From positions 372,001-436,000 of the forward strand of contig CBFFRP010000288.1 of assembly GCA_965644295.1 (NCBI GenBank): a stretch of 64,000 nt of DNA, given 5' to 3'. Shown piece after piece: positions 40,590 to 59,575 of this stretch. The notes under the pieces are model-generated. The model searched no databases. It was not told the origin of the DNA and saw only the letters and a list, made by a program, of their open reading frames with translations. This stretch comes from Paraphysomonas bandaiensis (lineage: Eukaryota > Protista > Chrysophyceae). Both the position numbers and the translations under genes were made by a program. The first letter of the stretch is position 1; every line of letters begins with the position of its first letter.

Positions 40590-41826
40590 ATGTTGCACAA
40601 TATATGTCGTATCGGTGCTGTGGCAGCTGGATCAATGTTTTGTATATCACCCGCAAGTTCTCTCTGTGATGAAGCGAAAAAAGATTTTGTTCCAGCAAAT
40701 AAGTTATTATTTTCATCTGCTTCGAGCTTGAGACCTGTAAAGAAGAAGAAGGAAGCTACTTCTGCTGCTTTGGTTATTGTATCTGGAACATGTCATCCTA
40801 AATTATCAAAAGAAATTGCAGACATTCTAGGTGTTTCCTTACATCACACAGAAATATCTCGATTTGCTGATGGTGAGGTTAAAATTGAACTGGAAAGTAT
40901 TAGAGGTGGCAATGTATTTGTTGTCCAACCCTGTGGGAATCCTGTCAGCGACAGTTCTATGGAGTTATTGCTTGCGATCTCTGCTGCTAAACGAGCTGGA
41001 GCAAAAAAAGTGACCGCTGTCATGCCATACTATCCTTTCAAGCATCATAGACGAGGCATGCCTCGTTCCAATAAGCATAAATCGAAGTTTTTGATATCTG
41101 CAGCGATGGACTTTGCTAAGATGCTACAAGAGATGGGAACAGATAGAGTGGTGACCGTGGATCTGCAGAGGCCAGGTCAAGGGCAGGAAGCCTGTTTCTT
41201 TGACAACTCGATACCTTTAGAGAACATTGTTACTACCAAATTAATATCGGATTACTTCCTTGAAACGGTGAAGCTGGAGGGTAACACAGTAGTAATCTCT
41301 CCCAACTACGAGTGCATGAACAAAGCAGTAAAATACGAGAGCCGGCTGCAGCAAGCGTACCCCGATGCTAACGTGACTCTCTCGGCTCTCGTTCACCATG
41401 GAATATCGGCACACAAACAGAGCACCGACCTTGAGGCTTTGGGAAAGCTGGAGGTATGATATTGAATGTTTTTATGATGTATGTCATGGTTACCTGCCCC
41501 AGGTGGAAGGTGCGAATGTGGTAATTATAGACGACATTATTGACTCCGGAGAAACCATCTCGTATATTGCAAACCGCGTCAAAAATGCCGGTGCCAAAAG
41601 GGTCTTCGCCATTGCATCCCACGGAGTTTTCACAGTGAGTGCCATGCAGGTCATCGATCGCAGCCCTATCGAGAAGGTAATTGTGACAAACTCTCTCCCG
41701 CTTCCCGCTGTGCACAGCTCCAAGATAGAGCAGGTGTCTGTGGCGCCCCTGCTGGCTCAGGTAATATGGACTGAGCAGTACAAGAGCAGAACAATTGACG
41801 AGGAGTATGAGATTGAGTTCCATTAG
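40590..41826 (+). CDS. Ribose-phosphate pyrophosphokinase (PRPS)-like protein with degenerate catalytic motifs, 2 exons
   Basis: RFADGEV, MELLLAISAAKRAGAKKVTAVMPY, IIDDIIDSGET, SHGVF and VTNS motifs. Confidence 0.85.
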
Positions 41827-42192
41827 ATAGACTAAATACTTCATAACATGAGAGTAGCTATTCAGTAACGTATAAAGCAGATATTTATTGGTGAAAGTAA
41901 AAGGAACTATTATTGGTCCTAGTCAGTCTGTTGGAATTTCCTAATCACACCTAAAATAGTGTAAAACACCCAAGTGAAACACTTTCATAGTTGATGCAAT
42001 TTATTCTTGCCAGTTGCGAACGATATCATCGTAAAAAAGTGAAGTGACAGCTACATCACACCATGAAATTCACTATTACGGAAAGAAGTAATCAATTAGT
42101 AATAATTAGTGCACAATGCAGCTTTAACTCCCACAAATGAAAGGTAGAAGCTTCAACTGTATACATTATGACACATAACAACTGTAATTTAT

Positions 42193-43416
42193 TTACGAAG
42201 ACTTATTTCTATGACTCGATAAGAGCTGCACATACTCCGACTTTTCGCAAAACCCAACAGCCTGGGCACTTAATCCGGCTGCTCTGATTGCCTCCTTGAG
42301 TTCCTTGACAGACATGTCCGCAGGGTCTTTGGCAGGAATAGCAAACGAGGCATCATTTGGTAAGACACGGGTAAGAAAATCGAGAGCATGGTTCAATTCC
42401 TCAGGACTGACAGAGTGAGTCAGGCCGGGATAACCCTTAAGCTCATATTGCGAGGCACCCTGCACACAAACAACAACGCATAACAAAAATTCAATTAGTA
42501 CCGGAAATGGGACTCTACCTGTCTTGTGATCTCAGCCTTTGTTTTTTCGGCCCAATCATATCGAACCTGTAGAGAATTTCATTAAAAAGTCAATTATCTA
42601 TGGTAAACCTACCATGGGGTCGGAAAGGCCGTGGCAATGAAGAATCGGAGTATCCTCAAGCCCTGGTGTCAGATGAAAGTTCTTAGCGGCCGGAAGATAT
42701 CCTGACATGACCAATATGCCAGCTAACTTCTCTTCCTGCTGCAGTTGCATTCCCACGGTTAGTGACATGGCTCCTCCCTGGAGAGTAAATAAGACAATAT
42801 CAAAATATACACTACGAAAATGTGGTACCTGAGAAAATCCAGCAAGCACCATACGAGAATAGGGAATGCCAGCGGCATTTTCTCGCTTGAGGACGTCACG
42901 GATAGTAGCACAACTTTCGGCAAGTCCATCACAGGTCTCGGATGCTCTGTCATCAAGGCCGACAATGTCATACCAGCTATTCATAGCCATGCCACCATTC
43001 AATGTCACAGGCTGGCAGGGTGCTACACAAGGCAAATATTAAATATCACTTACAACCCAGTACACAGTCACCAACCGGTTGGTAGTATAAATTTGCAATA
43101 CGGCATTCTGGAGGAAAACATCTCCGCTACATCAGCAAATCCATCAGCAGAATCCCCCAAACCATGCATAATAAGCCTGAAGCCATGAAAAATATTAATT
43201 CATAATAGCCATATGGGTAAATTAAATTATGATATACATCGTTGCAGAGTGTTGTCCATCTGGTGGAACTATAGTGATGGTATTACTGGCCCCGTCACGA
43301 ATAACTCTCGATGCCATTCTTTTCTGCACACTTCTACTGGACGAATGCCAGATAGGTCGAATGAAATTGAAAGTTATATCTCGTAGTGCCCTGTGGCAAT
43401 GTACACCCAATAGCAT
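42193..43416 (-). CDS. Acyl-protein thioesterase/lysophospholipase (APT1-like) with C-terminal helical module, 6 exons; alternative ATG at 43317
   Basis: MHGLGDS, NSWYDI, GFSQGG, HGLSDPMV and GLTHSV give an intact Ser-Asp-His triad. Confidence 0.9.
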
Positions 43417-43881: not shown

Positions 43882-44729
43882 ATGGGGCCTAAGAAAATAC
43901 CAATGAACTCCAAGGCTGCTGCAGCCATGCAGCGTAAAGCGGAACAAGAGGCTGAGAAAGAGAGAAAGAAAGCAGCTGAACAGGAAAGACAAGAAGCAGC
44001 TGAATGGGAAGTAGGGGCAAATAAGAAGAGTTCAGCTAGAAAGAAGGTAGAGACGATATGCGTCTGTTTAAGATGTTTGTTTTATTTATTGAAAAGGAAA
44101 CAGAGGAGCAGCACGCAGCTAAAATGGCCAAGAAAGCGGAGATTGCAGCACTCTTACAAGAAGAGGAAGGGTCTGTTGCGAGTGCAAAAAAGAAGACGAA
44201 AAAGAAAGGAAAAGATGACTTTGATAAGTTGAATGAAGCCCTTGCTGCTGCACCGAAGACCAAGGCCCAGAAGCTCCAGGAACAGAAAAAGAAGGCCGAT
44301 GAAGAACGCCGTAAGAAAGAGGAAGAAGCCCGTGCCCTCAAAGAAGAGAGGCGACTTGCGCAGGAGGAGGAGAGACGAAAGGCTGCTGCTCGTGGTATAG
44401 TAATAGACCACGGGGATGACTTGATGGTGGAGAATACCAACCGACGTGAAAGTGATTTCACAGAAGTGACTGGTGTGGAGGCGGCTATTGACGTCCTTTC
44501 CATGGGTGACCAGCCTGTGGATGCCCATCCTGAGAGAAGACAAAAAGCACTTCATAATGCCTACGTAGAGAAAATGCTTCCAATTGTAAAGCAAGAGCAT
44601 CCAGGTCTAAAGTTGTCTCAGTACAAGGAACGCATATTCGAAATGTGGAAGACGTCACCTGAGAATCCCAGATACCAGGCAGCTCTGGCATCTGCTGCAT
44701 CCAGGCAGCAACAGAGTGATGTTGCATAA
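43882..44729 (+). CDS. CCDC124: CCDC124/Lso2 ribosome-binding protein, 2 exons
   Basis: MGPKK...NSKA start, coiled coil, and HPERRQKA...PGLKLSQYKERIFEMWKTSPENP. Confidence 0.9.
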
Positions 44730-45957: not shown

Positions 45958-48900
45958 TTACATTTGAAACGGCATAGGTTCTCTCTTGTTGGTGTTTACC
46001 ACAAGAGTTCCTCTGCATACACTAGATCCAACTTCTGCATGGAAGCTCTTTTCAATTCTCTGCTCGAATGATGCCGCTATGTCACCTAGTGTAATATGCA
46101 CTACACCAACAAATCGAAGAGGCGATCCCCTTGCGATTTGAATTACAACAACGTCATCTGATTGAGACAATTCGTTAAACTGTTCACAGACAATTATTTC
46201 GATAGGGTCGAATAAAACAAGAGATGGGGAGTGATCATGAAACATAACGTGTGAATTTTCGATCTGTACAGTTCCCAGGGGTGAGCGAACGACACAAGAT
46301 ATAGAGTCCAATGTACGCGATGGAAATGTCAACCCAATAATTTCTGCAATCTCAATGCTCAATGTGATACCCATAGATATGCTTGGACCTTCATCAATGA
46401 GTGACATTGTGCTCGACTTCTTTACCACTGCAACCTGTGGTTTCGATATTGACGGTGGGCAGGTAACAGCTCGCTGCTGTTCCGGCATCTGAAAAGGAAC
46501 CACTGGTGTTACTTCCTGGCCACTCTTTTTCATCAAATACTTCTTAACTTGATATACTTTGGAGTTTACTTCTGTTTGAAGCTGTGCCAGTAGATTTAAG
46601 AAATTCATTTCCATCGAACGTATGTCTTTCATGAACGACTCCCTCGTTTCGCCCTCTTTATCCTCTGTAACTAAATTTAAACACATTGCCTTGTTTGTCG
46701 GGACCCAAGATATATCGTTGGCGTCTATACATCGGCGCACATACTGCTCTAGCCCGTCGTCATCATCCTTGTCCTGCTCCCAGATATATAGGATAAAAAA
46801 TAAATAGTTCCACATGTTGTGTTCTGTTTTGATATGGTACTTGAACCCCTTCGATGCTTTGTCGCGATCAAAGACTTGCTTGTTAATACCACATATGAAA
46901 CAAGTCTCTGTGGTGTCTCTCAATCTGTCAATCTTAGCCAGACGGAGCTCCGAGAAAGTATCAACAGTAATACCTCGAATTACATTAAGCAGCACAAAAC
47001 GAATCGCAATATCAAATGCCATGCTGAAGTACCACTGATTGTTTATGCGTTGATGCATATCTGCGTTGAAATCACCACTCCTACCATAGCCAACAGAGAA
47101 TTTGAAGCACTTATACAAAGATGAACAGTCGTCGGGAAAGGCCAACGCCCCAGCAGAGTTATATTCCAGAAACTGCATATGTCATATTAGTGTATACAAC
47201 GCAAAATGATAGTATACTTACCAACACCATCGCAAATATATACATCACAATAACACAGAGCAGACAGGCCATTGCTAACTGCTTGATAGGTGTAAAAACC
47301 GCAATGATAACATCCATAGCGTATGAGTTCTTTACTATAATATCTAATAGCAACAAAGTAAGAATGTGATCGACTGAAATGCTCCCCGCGGCAAGTATTA
47401 CGTATACAAAGTAATACAATGTCAATGGTTCCAATGCGGTCGCTACCAAGGACCTTAGGACTCCTTTGCCTTGCTTCATAGCAGTAATATATTTCACAGG
47501 GGCCCTTACAATGAGGAACAGTACTAATGTAAAAGACGAAAACACAATCTGAAATGTATTTAATACATTCACTGCAGATCGAATATTACTTGGTAGAGTA
47601 GGTTTACCGCACACAACCTCAGTTTCTTCCTCCTCACTGTACCCTTCGAAACATTCGCTACCATCATAAAACATGATTAACAGGAAATTGATGGTACAAC
47701 ATATCAAAAAAGTAACCCATGTGGCACGATTCTGATTTTGTTGACTGAATATCTTATTCACCCCTACTTCTTCAAGTGACTGCTGATGCAAGAGGTCGGT
47801 GTATATAACTTTTGCCCGAGTATACATATCCAAGATTTTATTTTCCTGGGACGAGCGATCCACGAATTCGACGAACTTCGATTTCGCATTATCAGTGAAC
47901 TGCTTGCACAGAGTTGGCACATTGTAAAATCTGCGCTGTAACTCCCCTCTCCACATGATCTCAACACTTGCAACACTTGAACTTCCCATCGTATTGTCAG
48001 AATTCTTCATGATATCCAACTCATTCCTTAAACTTGGTTTGAAATCACACAGCATCTGGAGAAGTACCAAGCTTTCTGTGCGCAATACCAACTCAATTTC
48101 CTCGGCTTCTTCGTCTTTCTCCGCATCATCTTCTGATGACTCAGCAGGGGCACACATAAGCTGGATGACATCTAAATGAATAACACTCAGCACACGTTCG
48201 TAGACAGCTAGCTTTTGCCCTTGGCCCTCCAAAAGAGCTTGAAAGATGTCGATGCCCGTTTTCTTGAGTTCCAGCTCTTTACCAACATCACAGTCACCCG
48301 TCACACGAGCTCTCATCTGATGATTTAATGTCTCGATCAAGGATGTATTCAGTGCAAAGTGGTCCTGATTTCCTTCACATGGCCCTTGAATCACTTCAAG
48401 TACTGTGGCTCCTACAGCAAGTGCTGCAGCGGTTGAGGTCTTACACGGAATACGTCCAAGACTCACCAAGTATGCCACCATGTCATCCAGTAGGTTTATC
48501 GACACTATTTTCCCAGGTTGTTCCCGCATAATGTCTTGATTCGGTCCATAGTGACCCTCGCACATCAGTTGCATAAATCGCACTGATATTATTTCTGGCG
48601 GAAGGTCGGGCTCTTCATCATCCTTCAATGTAATGACGCCATTCCAATCGTGCCAAGACATTAACTCGGCAATGATTTTCCGTAGCTGTAAGAAAAAAAA
48701 CTCAGAGTCGCCTGTTGACAGGTGATTGTACATCGTCTGCTGAACTTGTAGTGCTCCACCCTCTTTAAATAGCATGGCAACGCCCAACTTCACACACTCA
48801 AGAATAAGTTCACGGTCAATGCCGGGAGAAATCAGATCCAAACACAGCGTGGTCGCGCCACACGCATTGAATGTCTTCACAATATCTTCACAGGCAATAT

Positions 48901-51900
48901 CCTGCTCCTCGCCTCCATCATCATCGCGCTCATATATAGTCATGCCCCATACATTTTCAATCATTGTACGGAAGAGTTTGATTACCCACACGGCGGTTTT
49001 GGTGTACCTCTCACTTAGATTCTTCTCCCTTCCAGATGAATGAGTGACAACTTCTACAGCACCTCTTATATGATCCACCAGTTTCTTGAGAAGTGGCTCG
49101 CGGCGCACAGTGCTGGTCGAAGTTCGGTCTCCCGCCAAGGGCAGCGCGGTGATTTTCGATATTATGGCCTGAAACTCGTCGTTGAGAGTTTCTTGTACCG
49201 AGTCTTCTTTCGACAAATAGTCCAAAAATGTGGACAGTTTCGATGACAGTTTTCGTTCCTGGTAATCGGGGGTTTCCAGTTCAGCGATTGCAAGTGCAAC
49301 CTCAGATTTGGCGACATCTATGTGTGTGACCTGCACGAAATCAGATAGCACAATCCCTTTGGCTTTACTTAAGCTGTCCAAGGCGCCATATATGTAGGTT
49401 TTATGTTTCGTGCTGAGAATGGGACTGTCGAGGTCATAAATCCCTTTGAGCACATCAAACAACGATGTTATGATACCATCAATCTGAAGCATTGAGATCT
49501 GAAGAGTACTAGCCTGTGTACCGTAAGTAGCAGTGTGCTCTCGTCGAAATACGACAGGGTCATAGTACACCTTGAAGAACCCATACACAATCATAGCGCA
49601 TACGACAATGTATTCCACTCCTTGCCTAGATGATCCAGGACAGTCCCACCCGTTCCGCTCCACCATCCTGAGAGCATCTTTACCAGTTGACAAAACCTCC
49701 ACACAATGCTGTAATAGAGTCCAAATCTTAGGTGAATAAACCAGTCCTGGAATGAGCATCTCGACTTCAAGAATTGCGTTGTACAAAAATAATCCCGTTC
49801 GAATCTTTATAAAAAGAAGACATTTCGGATCAAGGATGGCATCAATAATATCTACATAGTTGAACATGGCCTGAACTTTAGTTTCAATTGTAGTGATATT
49901 GTAGTACCCAATAGTGCACCCAGCTAAAGCTTTTAACAGTTCCACATGGTAAGCTAATTCAGCAGCGATATCATCAGGTGACAAGTTTCTCCGATGCTGA
50001 TACGGCGCCATTAGTTTTAGTTTCTTCGAATATTCAAAGTGGCTGGTTGGACAAAAAAAGCATAAAATCTTCTTTTGGCGATTGGGTGAAGAAATCTGCT
50101 TGACAATTTCGTACTGATTTTCAAGAATATTTTTCTCTCCAATAGCTGTAACGGATGACAGAAGCGTTAAATATTGCGGAAATCTCCCGTTTTTACATAT
50201 CTTTTCAGTGAACTCCGCGATATAATGCATCGGAACCCGGCGCATGAGAGGCTCGTTATTCGAGAAAATAGCTGCGATAACGTGATGACTGCCAATGCCA
50301 TTGTCAACGGTTGACATGAAAAACTCCAGCTCTTCGTACATCTCATCTTGATTGGTAGTGTTGTCATATGCGTACCAATACAGCAAATCATTGCAAGCTG
50401 TCATAATCGATATCGTACTCTTAGCGGCGTTGGCTTCTTCGTTTGCAGATAAGTCCAATTTCTTCAACAGTTTCAAACAAACTTCCCAGCACCCAAAATT
50501 TCTGAGTAGATTCTGCATGTGAACATCTGGCTCATAGTCATGATCAAACTTCAACACCTTGCGTCGAACACGACAATTGTCTCTCAGAGTGTTCAGAATG
50601 GTCTCACTTCTTGCGCTGATACTTCGGTCTTCTTCTGTCCTGACTCCACCCCAGAGAGCAAATGTTTCAATATTTCTGTCCAGCTCCAATAACAGATCAG
50701 TTGTAAGGCGGAACTGTTTTTCTCGTGAGGGTGAAACAAGCATCTGAACCTGACGTGCATTCTCCATCATAACCTCTATGGAAGAGTGATGAGCCATTAG
50801 AAGATCTAGAACACTTTGTACAAGAGCGGGTTCGACATACATGAGTAAATCCAACAGTGTATCGTCGTATTCATCGTTACTAATTCTGAGCTCATTAGTA
50901 CTCTCACATATTCTACTAAAGGCATCTGCTGCACGAGCTGCATCTGCAGGACTATTGGTGGCTTCTGCTGCCCACTTACTAAAGCCATGAAGCAAAATAG
51001 TCAGATTACGGTCATCCAATATCTTCTGAACGTCTCTCAATACGTCTACCATGGCAACCATGGTACTGAGCTCATACGCTGGAGCTGTGCGATATCTCGC
51101 AGGAAGAGCCCATTTTCGAACCTCTTCGTCATCTTCTTTTGGAAGCTGTTTCAGCAGTCGAGCTGCGCGCACAACACGAACCAATCGTAGCATTCGTAGT
51201 GCTCTTAAAATTCCAGAAAAACTTCCAAATGACCCTAATGCATCCTCACTAGCCATGACAATGACATCTAACAGCACAACGGCAATATCAAGCTGTACAA
51301 AGTGATCACCGAAAAAAGTAGACCACTTATGCCGAACATTGTAGTGCACATATCCACGAAAAGATACCTCAGCAAAAAAAATAAATCCCACGACAAGATC
51401 GAACACAAACCACGGGGTTCCGCTATAGTTATATATAACTTGGACTAGAGCAACAGCAGTCGACACTAGCACAAGAACCATTACTAATGCCAGCTCTGTC
51501 ACTGACTCCATAAAACTCAGAGCAGACTTCTGCCATGTCGGCACCATGGCAACTAGCTTAGCCATATCTAAAGAGTTTGAGCTACCTATTCGAGCCGAAG
51601 CACTACTTGATTTATTGTCTATCTCTGGATTTCGACGATTCAGAACAGTCATGAGAGGAACAATTACATCTTGAAGCTTCTCGATTGTTCCGTAAAACTG
51701 CAGTGTAACGAGTTTCTTCAACACAGACACCATATATAGTGAATGAGTTTCCCACTTTCCACCATCTGCTCTCATCGACTTTATGTGACTGGAGAGAATA
51801 TGCTGAAGAAGTCCGAACCGATGCTCGCGCTTCTCATCTACACTAGCTATGGTTCCCTCTTCACTCTGCAGCGAGCTCCACATTTTTGATAGGCACGGTA

Positions 51901-54778
51901 CCCGTCTTGTGGTTTCGGATTCTCGGTCGACATACAGCGTTGTAATGAGAGATGCTGTTGCCCCATATAGGTCCGAGATATTCGATCCTTTACTTGACAC
52001 AGCGGACAGTGTTTGTGCTGAGAGAATCGTAATCAAATACTCATATGGAATCAGTGTTTCGATTTTAGATATTGCAGATACATTGCGATCTAAGCACATC
52101 TCAGAAAGGAGGTACAATTGGGCAACAAAATACTGAACAACTGCTTTCTTCCTTTCTTGAGTCATATTCCTTGGGGCTAGTTTCTTATCAGATTGTACTG
52201 GAGATGAATTCGATCTCATCTTAGACATATCTAGTACTCCCGCGGAGAGTGACCGTTTGATAAGCAGCGGAGGTTTCGATGACTTTGCTCCAGCGACACC
52301 GGCAACTGCGCCAGGTAGATTATTATTACTTCGTGGTCCAATTTTGGCAGATCTAAATAATTCAGATAGCGGAATAACTTCTTTTCCGAAGAGGGATTCC
52401 GTTGAAAACTTTTCGTCTAGGGTCGCCCACGTGACGGAGAGATATGGTAGTCCATCAGAAAGAGCTTTGTACCCCAGAGGAGCACACTCATGAGGTACTT
52501 TCTCAGGAATATATAACGAGTTGGCAAAAAACTCCCTCGTCTGGGCGACGTCTGTTGTTGAAGATTGAGCTAGCTTCACGAATATCATTGGCGCAATAGG
52601 TAACACAGCATCCATAACAAATCCCTGATTTCTACTTATACCGTGCCCAGAGCAGGAGCAAAACGCTTTCAACATTGTGAAATACATGCTCTTCATTTTC
52701 GCCTCTGGGCTTGTCAGCTGGTTTGTAAATATCTTTATTTCATTCGGACCCACACGTTCGGTTTGTAATTCCAAATTATCGTTTAGCATTTCCCTCACTA
52801 CATCTGCAGCTATCTGCTGAACGCCTACCCATCCCAACACAACATGCATATGAGATGCGACGTACAATTGGTTTGCTGAGTTACGCTTTACTGCTTGAAG
52901 TAGTAGTCGAAGTAATGATTCTGAAACCTTAGCGGCCATCCTATGAAGAAGTTTCTTCCGCATTTCAAGCTCTGGTTCTGCGGCCACTGCTTCTCTCATG
53001 TTGCGGGTATTGGAGCGACCAAATTCTTGTACTTGGTCGGTGTCTACATCCCCAGAAAGTTTCCCTTTAAACAGTGGCAGTAGCGAGTTCAGTAGAAACA
53101 AAACAATGTCGATGGTTCCTTGCTCGCGGAACATTTTTTGACGGCGGCCAATTACTGCATCATTTCTTATTATTTCTCCAAATTCGTTAACGGCATCATC
53201 GTCCTGCTCATCGGGGTTCGCAGGCGGTGTGTCAGATATAGAGTTTCCCTTGAGATAATTAATCATTTTCTCTACAACTTTATAAAATCGTTTGTCATCA
53301 GCAATATCCAGATCTGGCCAAATTCGATCAATAAACTCTTCGTTATCTTCATCATTCGGATCATATTCGTCAAAATTTTTCACTGCATCTAAATAACTTT
53401 TCATCATGTTCCGTATGGAATTTCCGACAAATACATCCATCGGTTGCTTGGACTCAGAGTCTTCTGTATCAGACGGGTCTTGATCACTGTAGCGAGAGAT
53501 GAATAAATACACTGCGTTCGACTTGTTACGCGTAGCTGAGCACTTGTAATTTGTAAAACCCGCGACTTCACGTAGCTCCCCACGCTCGAGGTATGCGCTG
53601 CTGTGACTGATTTGAACAGCTCGCTTGTCCTGCAAGAAATTACCAGTACTATGCAACTCTTGCACGGAAAACAATGTGCCTTTATCCATTGGACTATTCG
53701 CTACGGTGAGAACGTATTCTCCATCGCTGTCTCCTTCTCGCTTCATACACATATATTTACCAGTATTAATGTGCTTGAAACGCACTTGGTCAGTTTTCCA
53801 CTGAATAGGACCACCTAAATCAAGATAATGACTTCATATATGGTTCCAAAATAATGGCTCCAAACCTGATATTATTTGTTTACTCTCTAGTAGCCACAGA
53901 GCACTACTCGCGATGTTCTTATCAGACAATTCCATCACAATTTCTCCGTCCTCACTAAGTTCCATGATGCTGTCATCTTCACTTATTTCATCATCTTCAA
54001 TACCCCTATTTGTGATAATAGCTGGCCGTTGGAAAAGACTTAGACTCGACTGCGTCTCTGGGTCAACCAAAGAAACTAGCTCAGAAGTCAGAATCACATT
54101 AGGGTCCTCTGAATGCGTGGTACTTTGAAATATAGAGAGGAACCACGACGTGGGTTCCAGGGAAGCATTTACTTCTCTATGACCCCGAGAATACCCTTTG
54201 TCCGTACTATGCAGAAACTCATTCGGTCGCTCCGCAATATTCAGCTTTATTTCAGAATTCGACAGCACCACATCACCAGACTGATTAATTTTAAATCGCG
54301 GCTGAATGACCATCCATGAGTCCGATGTACCTTGCGGATGCAGACACACACGTATATTTTCGCGCTCATGTTCTGCAACTTGGTTTCCAACGACTGTGAC
54401 ATACTTCCGTGACTTGACGTGAAGCAATTGAATAGAGTCTCCATAGTGAACTTCATTTCCGAATTTCGTTTTCATGTAGAGTTCATTCATTTTTTGTTCA
54501 TTCTTCGCACCTAATCGAAGAGCTTCTAAATGGCGTATTCCGGCATCATCAACAGGAAAACCATTAGCTTCTTCTAGCTTTTGTATTTCCATCAACTCTT
54601 GCAATTCCGACGAGGCAGAATATTGCCTTGGAAGACATATTTGAAACCAATTATCATCAAACGAATCCATTTTTCCAACCACGATTTCATCACTGAGTAT
54701 ACCCTCTGCGCAGAGGTAGTTTTTGATTTTAATATTGCGCAAAGTAACAATGTCCCCAATCCTGACACATTCTGACAT
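45958..54778 (-). CDS. ITPR: IP3-receptor/RyR-family Ca2+ channel with inserted voltage-sensor domain and C2-like tail, 3 exons, ~2,900 aa
   Basis: Suppressor domain (IGDIVTL, YGDSIQLLHVKS), MIR (RFKHINTGKY), RQKMFREQ, RFMQLMCEGH, EVIQGPCEGNQ, VDTFSELR, CFICG and EHNMWNYLFF. Confidence 0.92.
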
Positions 54779-55547: not shown

Positions 55548-57559
55548 ATGGGTTGCTTTAATAGTAAACATCCAAATCATCAGCGCAAGCCCGAGAGGTG
55601 TATAAGTCCTGGGGTAGAAGCTCCTGCATTGGCCCAAACCAATGGCGCGTTTCAGAGGAGTTCATACCGACTGGTCCATGAACAAGTCATGGAGGAAATA
55701 TTAAACAAAAGTAATTTTCAGGGTATCGTTGGCCTCAAGAATCTAGGAAATACTTGTTTTATGAACAGTGCACTGCAATGCTTAGCGAATTCCGTTCCTC
55801 TTATGGATTATTTTCTGGGATATAATTGGCGACAGGAAATTAATGTCAATAACCCTATTGGTACCGGAGGGGTAGTGGCGGAACAATTCGGTGTCCTTGT
55901 TAGGGCCATGTGGGAATGTGAAGAGTACCGTGTCATTGCCCCAAAGGCTTTCAAACGAGCTCTGGGAGCTTTCCGAGCTCAATTCAGTGGATATGATCAG
56001 CAAGACTCCCAGGAGTTCTTGGCCTTTCTGCTGGACGGTCTACATGAGGATTTAAACCGAGTCATGCAGAAGCCGTACGTAGAAGAAATTGACTCGGATG
56101 GGAGGGAGCAAGAAGAGGTTGCGGTAGAAGCTTGGAAGGCGTACTTGCTGCGCAATCGCTCGATAATAGTTGACATATTTCAGGGCCAACTGCGAAATGT
56201 ACTCAGTTGTATGTCGTGTAGATACACGTCGTTTACCTTTGACCCGTTCATGTACATGACTGTGCCTGTTGTACGAAGTGGAAGGGTGCATATATGCGAC
56301 TGCCTTGCTGAGTTTTGCCGTCCTGAGATTTTATCGCTTGACTGCCAGGTAAGATACGAAGCCAACGGCTGTTGCGTGTATGTTTGGTTTGCAATGTTGC
56401 AGACTATTATTTTCACGAGCAGTACCTGAAAGAATTACTATATACGCATCGTACTAGTGCTGATATGTTATTATATCATACTTCACTTTCTAAAGTAATG
56501 AATGTGTTATAGTGGAAATGTCCTAAGTGCAAGGTACCTAGAGACGCTGAGAAAAAAATGGATATATGGATTGCACCTCCTATATTTATAATACATTTGA
56601 AAAGGTAAAAGGAATCATTTTATGTACACGCTGCGTAAGGCTATAGTAAAAGTACAATAACTCTCTGACTGAATTATCGTTGCTATCGGTGTGGTAGATT
56701 TCAGGAAAACTCATTCGGTAGAAGATCCAAGCTTGACACTTTTGTAGACTTCCCTACTGAGAATCTGGACTTATCTGAATTCATGGGCAGCAAGTACGTA
56801 CTAATATACGTTTGTCTACTTTACACATACCAAGTTATTGCTTATTGTAATTTGGCTTTTATGAATTCGTGATGTATAGACAGCCGGGTACTCACACATA
56901 TGACCTGTATGGCGTGTCCAACCACCATGGAAGCTTGAGTGGAGGGCATTACACAGCTTTTGCGAAAAACAGAGTGAACAAGAAATGGTGCATAGTTTTC
57001 TAGAAATATGTGTTTTTGTCTTATATCCTTGTAGGTACTTTTATGATGATGTTAGAGTTAAAGAGGTCAGGGCAGAAGATGTTTGCACAAAAGCGGCCTA
57101 CGTTCTTTTCTATCATAAAGTTGGTGATGGTATGGTCGACATATATGTACTTACTGTGTTTCAGGTGTATATTCCCGAAGAGATCCGCATGCACAGCTCA
57201 GATGGAGAGGTAGTACCAATGCCGCTACAATATGAGAGAAATATATCGGGCGGTTTAATCAAGAGGCAGAGTATCACAGTACCACACTATTGGCCTCATG
57301 TCAATGATCCATCTGTATCAATTAGGGATTCTATGGTGTGTTTCTATATTCACAGTGAAATAAGTTGACTCAGTATCTTGTTTGATAACTGTAGGACCCC
57401 TCTGAGCCACCAGAAGTTCAAACTCTTAGGGATGCCCTTCAGAAGGCTGCGGTGAATGCCTCTGGTGATGCATCAGCCCAGGATAGCCCAAAGTCTGAAG
57501 GGTCTCGAATTAATAAGTTCAGTTCGTCTCGTGTGGCATCTGAAACTGCCCTAGGCTAA
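55548..57559 (+). CDS. Ubiquitin-specific protease (C19; USP2/8/15-like), 7 exons, MGC acylation-type start
   Basis: [46 protein letters not shown] and AAYVLFY motifs. Confidence 0.92.
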
Positions 57560-59575
57560 CAGTTCTTTCATAGTTGACTATTTATTTACGTTGTGGTGTG
57601 TACTGAAATACCCTCGAATTGTATGTGCTATGAGTATTTACCAGTGTACTATGTTGCGATAATAGTTGTGGTTGGCGACATAATAAGGATTTTTTATTAC
57701 TTTTCTGGTATAATTTTGTAGGGAAATTAAGAAACGACATGTTGTACAGCCAGTTATTGATAGGATCATACAGAATGCTACCGTGTGACAGCTAGTATAA
57801 CCGTATAACCCCATGATTGACTCAAATCCGATTGTTGTATTTGTAATAACCAGCCATCTGGTTATTTTATGCTATATGAGCTCTCTATTGTATATGTTTA
57901 AGTTTGTACATACTATCTAGACAACGTAGGTTGAATATTATTATTATTAGCATATCTCACATTAAGCTATATGATATATTATGAATATGACAATTCATGC
58001 TTATCATTGATACTTATATATCTATTCAAAAGACAAAGAAAGATAGGATTACCAATAATGAAGTTCAATGATGAAGATATTACGATTGATGATATATATG
58101 TATATGTTATTATTATATATATATTAATGCTTAAGGCTGGAGAAGTTTACTGGAGAATTCCGGGTTTGATATTCACGCTGATAGACGTGTATTGCCAGAT
58201 TATCCAGTAATACAGTTGTACTTATGTATTTCATTAGGTACTTATTGTTTATTGAACTGTACTTGGAACTACGTATACAAGGCTTCAACTACAATGAGAA
58301 TATACTGAATGTATCTTCCCTTATGCGTTGATGATGAATCAGTTGTGATCAGGCTGAGCTATTAGTAATGTATATGGGTGAAGGTCATTCCAGTAGGCCT
58401 TCCTCTGGCCTGGGAATCATATGTATATATTGATTATTGATAATAAGATGCAATTTCTGTACTCTGGAAGTTGTTTGTAGATAGTATTGTAGTTGTAGAC
58501 ATATTCATTGTTAGTTATCTATTATTACCATGGAGGGAGAACCTAAAATGGAGGTTCATGACTCTAGTCTGTTTCATTTAGCTCTGAGTTGGATCAGAGC
58601 AATGATTATTGAAGAACAACAGTCGATATCGAGTGCTGATGAGCAGCGCGTCAGAGATATTGGACTCGTTACTGGATTAGATGATGCTGACACCAATAGG
58701 AGGGTGTTACATATTATAGGCATATTGAGATACAATGGTGGCTTTTACATTCCCCACGTATCACGTACACCTATATATCTCTATATCATACTATAGTTTT
58801 GATATCTCCGTCAGTCGTCTATTAAATACTACTATTTCTTCTCTCAATCGATTAACAAACCAAAATAATCCATATCATAAAATATGTACATTAGAGAAAT
58901 GTGTATATAATCGGTCAGTGTTATCATCTAGCGCACTATATTCTTGAAAGCAAACACGTCTTTAACAAACAGTGCAAGAGAACAGACTATAATTCAGCTC
59001 CATGTCCTTGAGAATACACCTTCAAGCACTGCAATACATCACAGTGTCGACTCATATATAGCTCAAGACTCTCTGCCGCTGAATATTTTGGAAAGAGCAA
59101 TTACTCATCACTTATGACCTGGTTTGGAACAATACTTTGAAGCTAAGGTCAGTGGTTGGACACTTCCACCTCTATGTCCTCAGATGCTCTGGAGATATCT
59201 GGATATATAGAGAGCCCGAATCTATAGAAACATGCATTTTCAGGATTTCTAAAATCGGATTTCATGGTTCTGCTGCCCTGGAAATTGGTTGAGGCAAAAA
59301 ATCGCAATAAAAGACTCTGAAAAGTGGGTATTTTCAACACCACAGCCATAAAAAGCGGTGCTAATGGGGATACATAAGCAAAAACGGCGATATTTGGGTG
59401 ATCTCTCCCACATAAAACTGCCTTGGTGTAAAACCACAGTACAATGATACGTTATGCAGCATGCAGCACAGTGCTACGAAATGTTCCCCTTCTATATGAT
59501 ATGAGACCACAGCAAGTGTCAACACTGTCATCACAGGTAAACATATTACTAGATTGATTTGTTATATTTACAATT

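What the first reader, a model, noticed from the sequence alone, without database searches (positions are those of the whole stretch)
51146..51500. Complete voltage-sensor domain (S1-S4) inserted inside an IP3-receptor-type channel
Seen: four hydrophobic segments lie within exon 2. They are LALVMVLVLVSTAVALV; WFVFDLVVGFIFFAEVSFR (S2, with the F-x-x-E-x-x-x-R signature); LDIAVVLLDVIV (S3 Asp); and an S4 RALRMLRLVRVVRAARLLK with six Arg and one Lys at every third position. No pore follows the S4. The module sits between segments that align by eye to IP3R 'FGFY...LLAILD' and 'TKLKIIEIL...RLDYR', which is a variable cytosolic loop roughly 1,300 aa before the channel's own TM region. Known: canonical IP3Rs and RyRs have no charged S4 and no TM segments there. 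Inference: either a voltage-gated IP3R derivative, or one chain whose sensor sits in one membrane (plasma or flagellar) and whose pore sits in another (ER), like a fused DHPR-RyR coupler. I know of no description of this architecture.
Basis: partly seen in the sequence, partly recalled or inferred. Interest (0 to 1): 0.92.

Follow-up and report, generated by a model that had tools for sequence, protein, structure and literature searches.

The report
IP3-receptor channel with built-in voltage sensor
A marine protist transcribes a giant calcium-release-type channel (IP3-receptor family) with a complete voltage sensor in a known regulatory loop; I found this design in no paper, it is shared by over 100 algal and protist proteins, and it may let membrane voltage steer this class of channel directly.

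Summary
The minus-strand gene (54778-45958, three exons, 2,906 aa) is an IP3R-type channel. Its insert is a complete S1-S4 voltage sensor without a pore: Pfam Ion_trans positions 7-112; the model (pLDDT 83) superposes on Nav/Cav sensors at Z 14.8. One spliced RNA contig runs from the sensor to the channel's S5 without a mismatch, so it is neither a chimera nor an intron.

The insert replaces the loop equivalent to the IP3R3 'wedge loop'. In 164 relatives, 100 keep a charged S4. Named carriers include chrysophytes, Triparma, two pelagophytes and Cymbomonas; losses are nested, so the fusion is old. The IP3 site is mostly lost and the activating Ca2+ site kept.

This copy also has a remodelled pore (GGGxGD filter replaced, Arg at the gate Phe) and a C2-like tail. 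One unrelated IP3R carries a different, HCN-type sensor at another site.

Best reading (0.45): voltage acts through the sensor on gating, with sensor and pore in one membrane. The two-membrane 'fused DHPR-RyR' reading is about 0.2. No function has been measured. The scan reported this architecture before on seven other pieces of this genome.

The parts
53866..54778 (-). Exon 1: IP3R suppressor (beta-trefoil 1) domain and start of beta-trefoil 2
   Evidence: Pfam Ins145_P3_rec E 5e-30; IP3R1/2/3 hits
53815..53865 (-). Intron 1, 51 nt, GT..AG (predicted; not covered by the reads call)
   Evidence: homologues are continuous across it
47222..53814 (-). Exon 2: MIR, RIH, central linker with the voltage sensor, ARM2/ARM3, RIH_assoc, channel TM helices to S5
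52868..53149 (-). Degenerate IP3-binding core: hIP3R3 K507 and R510 equivalents kept; R503, R568, K569 equivalents are G, S, A
   Evidence: residue list from PMC10613215; transfer of numbering by motif
51503..51541 (-). S0-like helix before the sensor
   Evidence: helix in model; conserved Trp
51431..51493 (-). Voltage sensor S1
51356..51412 (-). Voltage sensor S2 with charge-transfer Phe and Glu (F803, E806, R810 in ORF numbering)
51254..51301 (-). Voltage sensor S3 with D833 and D840
51149..51205 (-). Voltage sensor S4: R861, R864, R867, R870, R873, R876, K879
51071..51148 (-). Short S4-to-core linker with a W-x-x-P-x-R-Y motif, leading into the central-linker helix (IP3R1 962 onwards)
48227..48397 (-). 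Activating Ca2+ site glutamates (hIP3R3 E1882 and E1946 equivalents), both kept
   Evidence: PMC8930994
47222..47725 (-). Channel's own uncharged pseudo-sensor helices and S5
47173..47221 (-). Intron 2, 49 nt, spliced out in RNA contig
47056..47088 (-). Remodelled selectivity-filter region (two residues shorter; S-G-D-F-N-A in place of G-G-G-x-G-D)
46975..46977 (-). Arg at the position of the hIP3R3 gate residue F2513
45988..46365 (-). C-terminal C2-like domain, apparently without the usual Ca2+-binding Asp pattern
   Evidence: atlas lead; relatives' tails hit Pfam C2
45958..47172 (-). Exon 3: pore loop, S6, zinc-finger linker, coiled tail, C2-like domain, stop

Best explanation
The gene encodes an IP3R-type channel subunit (tetrameric by homology) with a working voltage sensor grafted into the loop of the central linker domain that is the 'wedge loop' of human IP3R3. 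Shown: the architecture, its transcription, the sensor's fold and its long conservation. Inferred: four TM helices leave both ends cytosolic, and sensor and pore sit in the same bilayer, in a membrane that carries a potential (surface or flagellar membrane, or a vacuole-type organelle). Also inferred: S4 movement acts through the short, length-constrained linker on the central-linker helix and shifts the ARM2 extended/retracted balance that IP3 and the wedge loop control in animals. Voltage would then replace or supplement IP3 as the priming input, with Ca2+ at the retained site as co-activator. In this copy the pore is remodelled, so the ion passed is uncertain.
For: S1-S4 fold with all charge-transfer residues (hallmarks per PMC13661669). 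The sensor is the best-conserved region tested against the nearest relative (79% identity, against 58-78% in six other regions). S4 has five or more charges in 100 of 164 relatives across long branches. The insertion site equals the wedge loop. The S4-to-Trp linker is 11-18 aa (5th-95th percentile) while the N-terminal linker is 43-148 aa. That Trp is present in 79 of 100 S4-positive and 3 of 23 sensor-deleted proteins. The IP3 site is degenerate and the Ca2+ site kept. A second sensor type occurs at another site in P0241. The Chlamydomonas IP3R is abundant in the flagellar proteome (PMC8318260), a precedent for a surface location.
Against: There is no functional or localisation data. About a third of relatives have lost the S4 charges (33) or the insert (23), so the channel does not need it. 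IP3-site degeneracy is general in protist IP3Rs, and trypanosome ones are still IP3-gated (PMC9694693). I could not measure whether the linker reaches the pore's bilayer in a tetramer, and the flank-plus-sensor model was unreliable over the sensor. The 61-sequence conservation set was chosen by sensor score, and related sequences are not independent.
Confidence: 0.45

Rival explanations
1. Two-membrane coupler: the sensor sits in the plasma or flagellar membrane and the pore in an apposed store, so one chain does the work of Cav1.1 plus RyR1.
For: The sensor hangs from the cytosolic cap on a long, variable N-terminal tether. The C2-like tail could bind a second membrane. The family sensor profile matches Cav channels best, repeat III highest, and one Cav1.1 sensor suffices for EC coupling (PMC11358481); this is a similarity, not shown ancestry.
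Against: From my own knowledge: both TM modules would enter the ER from one chain, and I know no established route that sorts them into separate organelles, short of budding or membrane continuity. The linker on the S4 side is short.
Confidence: 0.2
2. The sensor is real but does not gate the pore: it serves as a membrane anchor, sorting or clustering module, or reports lipid, pH or tension.
For: 33 relatives keep the TM helices without a charged S4 and 23 have deleted the insert, with the channel otherwise intact.
Against: An anchor does not need six i+3 basic positions conserved at 98-100% together with their counter-charges (set chosen by sensor score).
Confidence: 0.18
3. This paralogue is not a Ca2+ channel: it is a voltage-sensing modulatory subunit in heterotetramers, or a channel of altered selectivity.
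For: Arg at the gate Phe, a second Arg in S6 and loss of GGGxGD. Basic gate residues occur in 23 of 103 relatives, in two subclades. The genome holds several paralogues.
Against: The pore is 58-72% identical within the subclade and gains an Asp in the filter, which looks like coordinated remodelling rather than decay. RyR has a polar Gln at the same gate position. This rival is compatible with the best explanation for the sensor itself.
Confidence: 0.15
4. Artefact: assembly chimera, intron or chance hydrophobic stretch.
For: None found.
Against: A continuous spliced RNA contig and two DNA-type assemblies agree without mismatch (one of them may be the window's source). More than 100 homologues share the insert.
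Confidence: 0.01

Closest known systems
Inositol 1,4,5-trisphosphate receptors (ITPR1-3; protist and oomycete ITPR homologues)
   Same: Domain order (suppressor, MIR, RIH, RIH_assoc, 6-TM pore, zinc finger), fold of the sensor's flanks, activating Ca2+ site.
   Different: A 4-TM charged sensor replaces the wedge loop; the IP3 site is mostly lost; this copy has a remodelled filter and gate and a C2-like tail. The oomycete ITPR architectures listed in PMC7399828 include no such insert.
Cav1.1-RyR1 excitation-contraction coupling
   Same: A Cav-like S1-S4 linked to a release-type channel through its cytosolic body.
   Different: There it is two proteins in two membranes plus adaptors; here it is one chain, and the membrane arrangement is unknown.
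Pore-less voltage-sensor fusions (Ci-VSP/TPTE, SLC9C1, Hv1)
   Same: A stand-alone S1-S4 acting on another domain through a short linker after S4; Ci-VSP and SLC9C1 are among the structural matches.
   Different: The effector is a giant channel and the sensor is inserted mid-chain. The Hv S1 Asp and the RxWRxxR motif are absent.
Oomycete PKDRR channels
   Same: Protist channel mixing parts of release channels and voltage-gated-superfamily channels.
   Different: PKDRR is a TRP/PKD channel with RyR repeats (PMC7399828); this protein is a whole IP3R with an extra sensor.

Membership tests
IP3R/ITPR superfamily | Ins145_P3_rec, MIR, RIH, RIH_assoc, C-terminal pore, in that order | tested here: met
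   (MIR below its cut-off)
IP3R/ITPR superfamily | Central linker/ARM fold | tested here: met
   All Foldseek hits at E<0.001 are IP3R1/IP3R3
IP3-gated IP3R | Seven basic IP3-binding residues (hIP3R3 R266, R270, R503, K507, R510, R568, K569) | tested here: not met
   2 kept, 3 replaced, 2 in an unalignable acidic stretch
IP3-gated IP3R | Activating Ca2+ site E1882/E1946 | tested here: met
IP3-gated IP3R | GGGxGD filter and Phe/Ile gate | tested here: not met
   Filter replaced and Phe changed to Arg in this copy; most relatives keep both
IP3-gated IP3R | Ca2+ release from a store on IP3 binding | not testable with these tools
   needs experiment
Voltage-sensor domain (S1-S4) | Four-helix bundle of VSD fold | tested here: met
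   pLDDT 83; Z 14.8, rmsd 2.0 over 123 residues to Nav1.5; Foldseek hits weak (best E 0.012) but the top 48 all sensor-bearing proteins
Voltage-sensor domain (S1-S4) | S2 Phe and Glu, S3 Asp (charge-transfer centre) and i+3 S4 charges | tested here: met
Voltage-sensor domain (S1-S4) | Voltage-dependent charge movement | not testable with these tools
   needs electrophysiology
Hv1 proton channel | Mid-S1 Asp and RxWRxxR S4 | tested here: not met
   S1 has no Asp and S4 no Trp; S4 motif from PMC10377628, S1 Asp from my own knowledge
Ryanodine receptor | RyR repeats, SPRY domains, about 5,000 aa | tested here: not met
   No such Pfam hits, 2,906 aa, IP3R hits far above RyR
PKDRR | PKD/TRP channel with RyR repeats | tested here: not met

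The most novel reading that the evidence does not exclude
One polypeptide spans a membrane contact, with its voltage sensor in the excitable surface or flagellar membrane and its release pore in a store, giving mechanical excitation-release coupling without a partner channel; IP3R-type channels may have captured voltage sensors twice independently.
Probability: 0.2. Interest if true: 0.97.

Novelty: new variant of a known kind. Interest (0 to 1): 0.8.

Why it matters
IP3R/RyR channels are defined as ligand-gated, with an uncharged pseudo-sensor; voltage reaches them only through partner proteins. A widespread protist family with a built-in sensor at a known allosteric loop suggests a direct voltage input to this channel class, and a candidate for how flagellate algae and grazers turn membrane potential into Ca2+ signals. 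It also gives a one-gene system in which to study sensor-to-release-channel coupling, a long-open question for Cav1.1-RyR1. Natural paralogues with intact, uncharged or deleted sensors, and with canonical or remodelled pores, supply controls.

Tried and rejected
Chimera or intron: rejected. Hv-type proton channel: hallmark residues absent. RyR or PKDRR: domain content does not fit. Recent single-lineage accident: rejected by the survey and trees.

Dead ends and limits: the flank-plus-sensor model from 10 sequences had pLDDT below 50 over the sensor and gave no geometry. A single-sequence PDB search of the IP3-binding core found nothing; profiles were needed. A metagenome scan for relatives of the second-site sensor found one 22%-GC locus with no IP3R similarity, so that case rests on one sequence. 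Six literature searches found no description; the library lacks most subscription papers. The trees lack canonical IP3R outgroups, so the root and the Cymbomonas origin (ancient or transferred) are open. The atlas search with the sensor region gave only hits under 0.8.

Full report
Gene. The finding lies on the minus strand in a three-exon gene: 54778-53866, 53814-47222 and 47172-45958, 2,906 codons by arithmetic. Residue numbers below count from window 53785; add 314 for the spliced protein. Pfam gives Ins145_P3_rec, MIR (below cut-off), RYDR_ITPR and RIH_assoc in the IP3R order. The best solved relatives are IP3R1-3, far ahead of RyR. Neighbours are ordinary eukaryotic genes.

Observation. 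The insert matches Ion_trans positions 7-112 only (E 6.4e-9), and no shuffle of the ORF produced such an S4 (0 of 2,000). An AlphaFold model from 61 sequences has pLDDT 83 and superposes on Nav1.5, Nav1.7 and CatSper sensors at Z 14.1-14.8, rmsd 2.0-2.4. A profile of the insert matches Cav1.1/1.2 best, then other Cav and Nav. The charge-transfer Phe, Glu and Asp that define voltage sensors (PMC13661669) are present. In that set the Phe and both S3 Asp are invariant, the S2 acid is always Glu or Asp, and six S4 positions are 98-100% basic (the set was chosen by sensor score).

Not an artefact. A 9,431-nt contig of a probable RNA run covers 47100-53050 without a mismatch and skips exactly intron 2; two other runs hold the stretch unspliced. 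So the sensor and the channel's TM region are in one transcript. The same run holds a second contig whose two matched points are 3,827 nt apart, against 3,848 in the window, probably a paralogue with the insert. Intron 1 was not covered by the reads call.

Family. Three homologue searches and one profile search gave a large family. Of 164 near-full-length proteins, 100 have five or more S4 charges at this site, 33 keep TM helices without them, 23 have deleted the insert and 8 are truncated or unclear. A further 38 or so found later nearly all carry it. Named carriers are Epipyxis and a Chrysophyte H1 genome, Triparma laevis, Chrysophaeum taylorii, Aureococcus anophagefferens and two Cymbomonas tetramitiformis genes. 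One Cymbomonas gene spans 10.6 kb of a 104-kb contig. In trees built on the C-terminal region alone, losses are nested within S4-positive clades, and the window protein falls in a clade (SH-aLRT 99) whose named members are chrysophytes. The trees lack canonical IP3R outgroups, so they show age and repeated loss but not the root.

Site and coupling. A profile of mostly sensor-less relatives aligns to IP3R1 726-902 and 962-1249. The gap corresponds to the wedge loop, P897-E958 of human IP3R3, which stabilises the ARM2-extended resting state and carries a PKA site (PMC10613215). The tether before S1 varies widely (43-148 aa), while the stretch from S4 to a conserved Trp is 11-18 aa. That Trp is found in 79 of 100 S4-positive and 3 of 23 deleted proteins (relatives are not independent). 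This asymmetry is what a mechanical link through the S4 side would give (inference). Of seven IP3-binding basic residues, two are kept, three replaced and two unalignable, but such decay is common in protist IP3Rs (PMC9694693). The two activating Ca2+ glutamates are kept.

What is special about this copy. Most relatives keep a GGGxGD-like filter and the gate Phe (72 of 103 have Phe). The window's subclade has a filter two residues shorter with a new Asp, Arg at the F2513 position and usually a second Arg in S6; a related subclade has Lys at the gate. The pore is 58-72% identical within the subclade, so it looks remodelled rather than decayed, but Ca2+ permeation cannot be assumed. The tail is C2-like: the atlas result is a lead only, and the tails of Triparma and another relative pass Pfam C2.

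A second capture. P0241 (assembly GCA_902530625.1) is an IP3R-type channel with no sensor at the wedge loop but an HCN/KCNH-type S1-S4 about 700 residues further on. If real, this is an independent insertion. It rests on one sequence; a scan for relatives found none.

Mechanism. Best (0.45): the sensor moves with voltage and biases the priming step through the central linker, with sensor and pore in one membrane. Both modules come from one chain, and a green-algal IP3R is abundant in the flagellar proteome (PMC8318260). Rivals: a two-membrane coupler like Cav1.1-RyR1 (0.2; PMC11358481); an anchor or non-voltage role (0.18); this paralogue as a modulatory or differently selective subunit (0.15, overlapping with the first); artefact (0.01). 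Architecture, transcription, fold and conservation are shown. Charge movement, coupling, location and the permeant ion are inferred.

Novelty. Six searches of the open literature found no description, and reviews of oomycete ITPRs and of voltage-sensor diversity do not mention it. It belongs to the IP3R superfamily by architecture, but fails the IP3-site and pore tests of a canonical IP3-gated receptor. The scan noted the same architecture on seven other pieces of this genome; I take these as paralogues, not as support. I rate it a new variant of a known kind, interest 0.8.

Noticed in passing
L005:769-9987 (P0241, residues about 2229-2367): IP3R-type channel with an HCN/KCNH-type S1-S4 sensor at a different site (between ARM2 and ARM3) and none at the wedge loop; possible independent second insertion. 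Single sequence.
   Followed up: partly
window 47088-46948 (-): Remodelled pore: GGGxGD filter replaced and Arg at the gate Phe; basic gate residue in 23 of 103 relatives, in two subclades.
   Followed up: partly
window 46365-45988 (-): C2-like C-terminal domain; a clearer C2 in Triparma P0286 and P0281.
   Followed up: partly
P0309 residues about 366-420: A relative with EF-hands directly after its voltage sensor, in the coupling linker.
   Followed up: no
L004:10001-20602 (Cymbomonas tetramitiformis): A green alga carries two sensor-bearing IP3R genes among otherwise stramenopile-named relatives; ancient origin or gene transfer not resolved.
   Followed up: partly
window 48894-48949 and 52724-52741 (second contig in runs X1, X4, X7): Transcribed paralogue with nearly the same spacing across the insert.
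   Followed up: no
P0066: Family member deposited as 'archaeon'; it nests among chrysophyte-type sequences, probably mis-binned.
   Followed up: no
window 55548-57560 (+), 44058-44729 (+), 42190-43200 (-), 40590-41459 (+): Ordinary neighbours: ubiquitin-specific protease, CCDC124, an esterase-like gene (by eye), PRPP synthetase-like.
   Followed up: no
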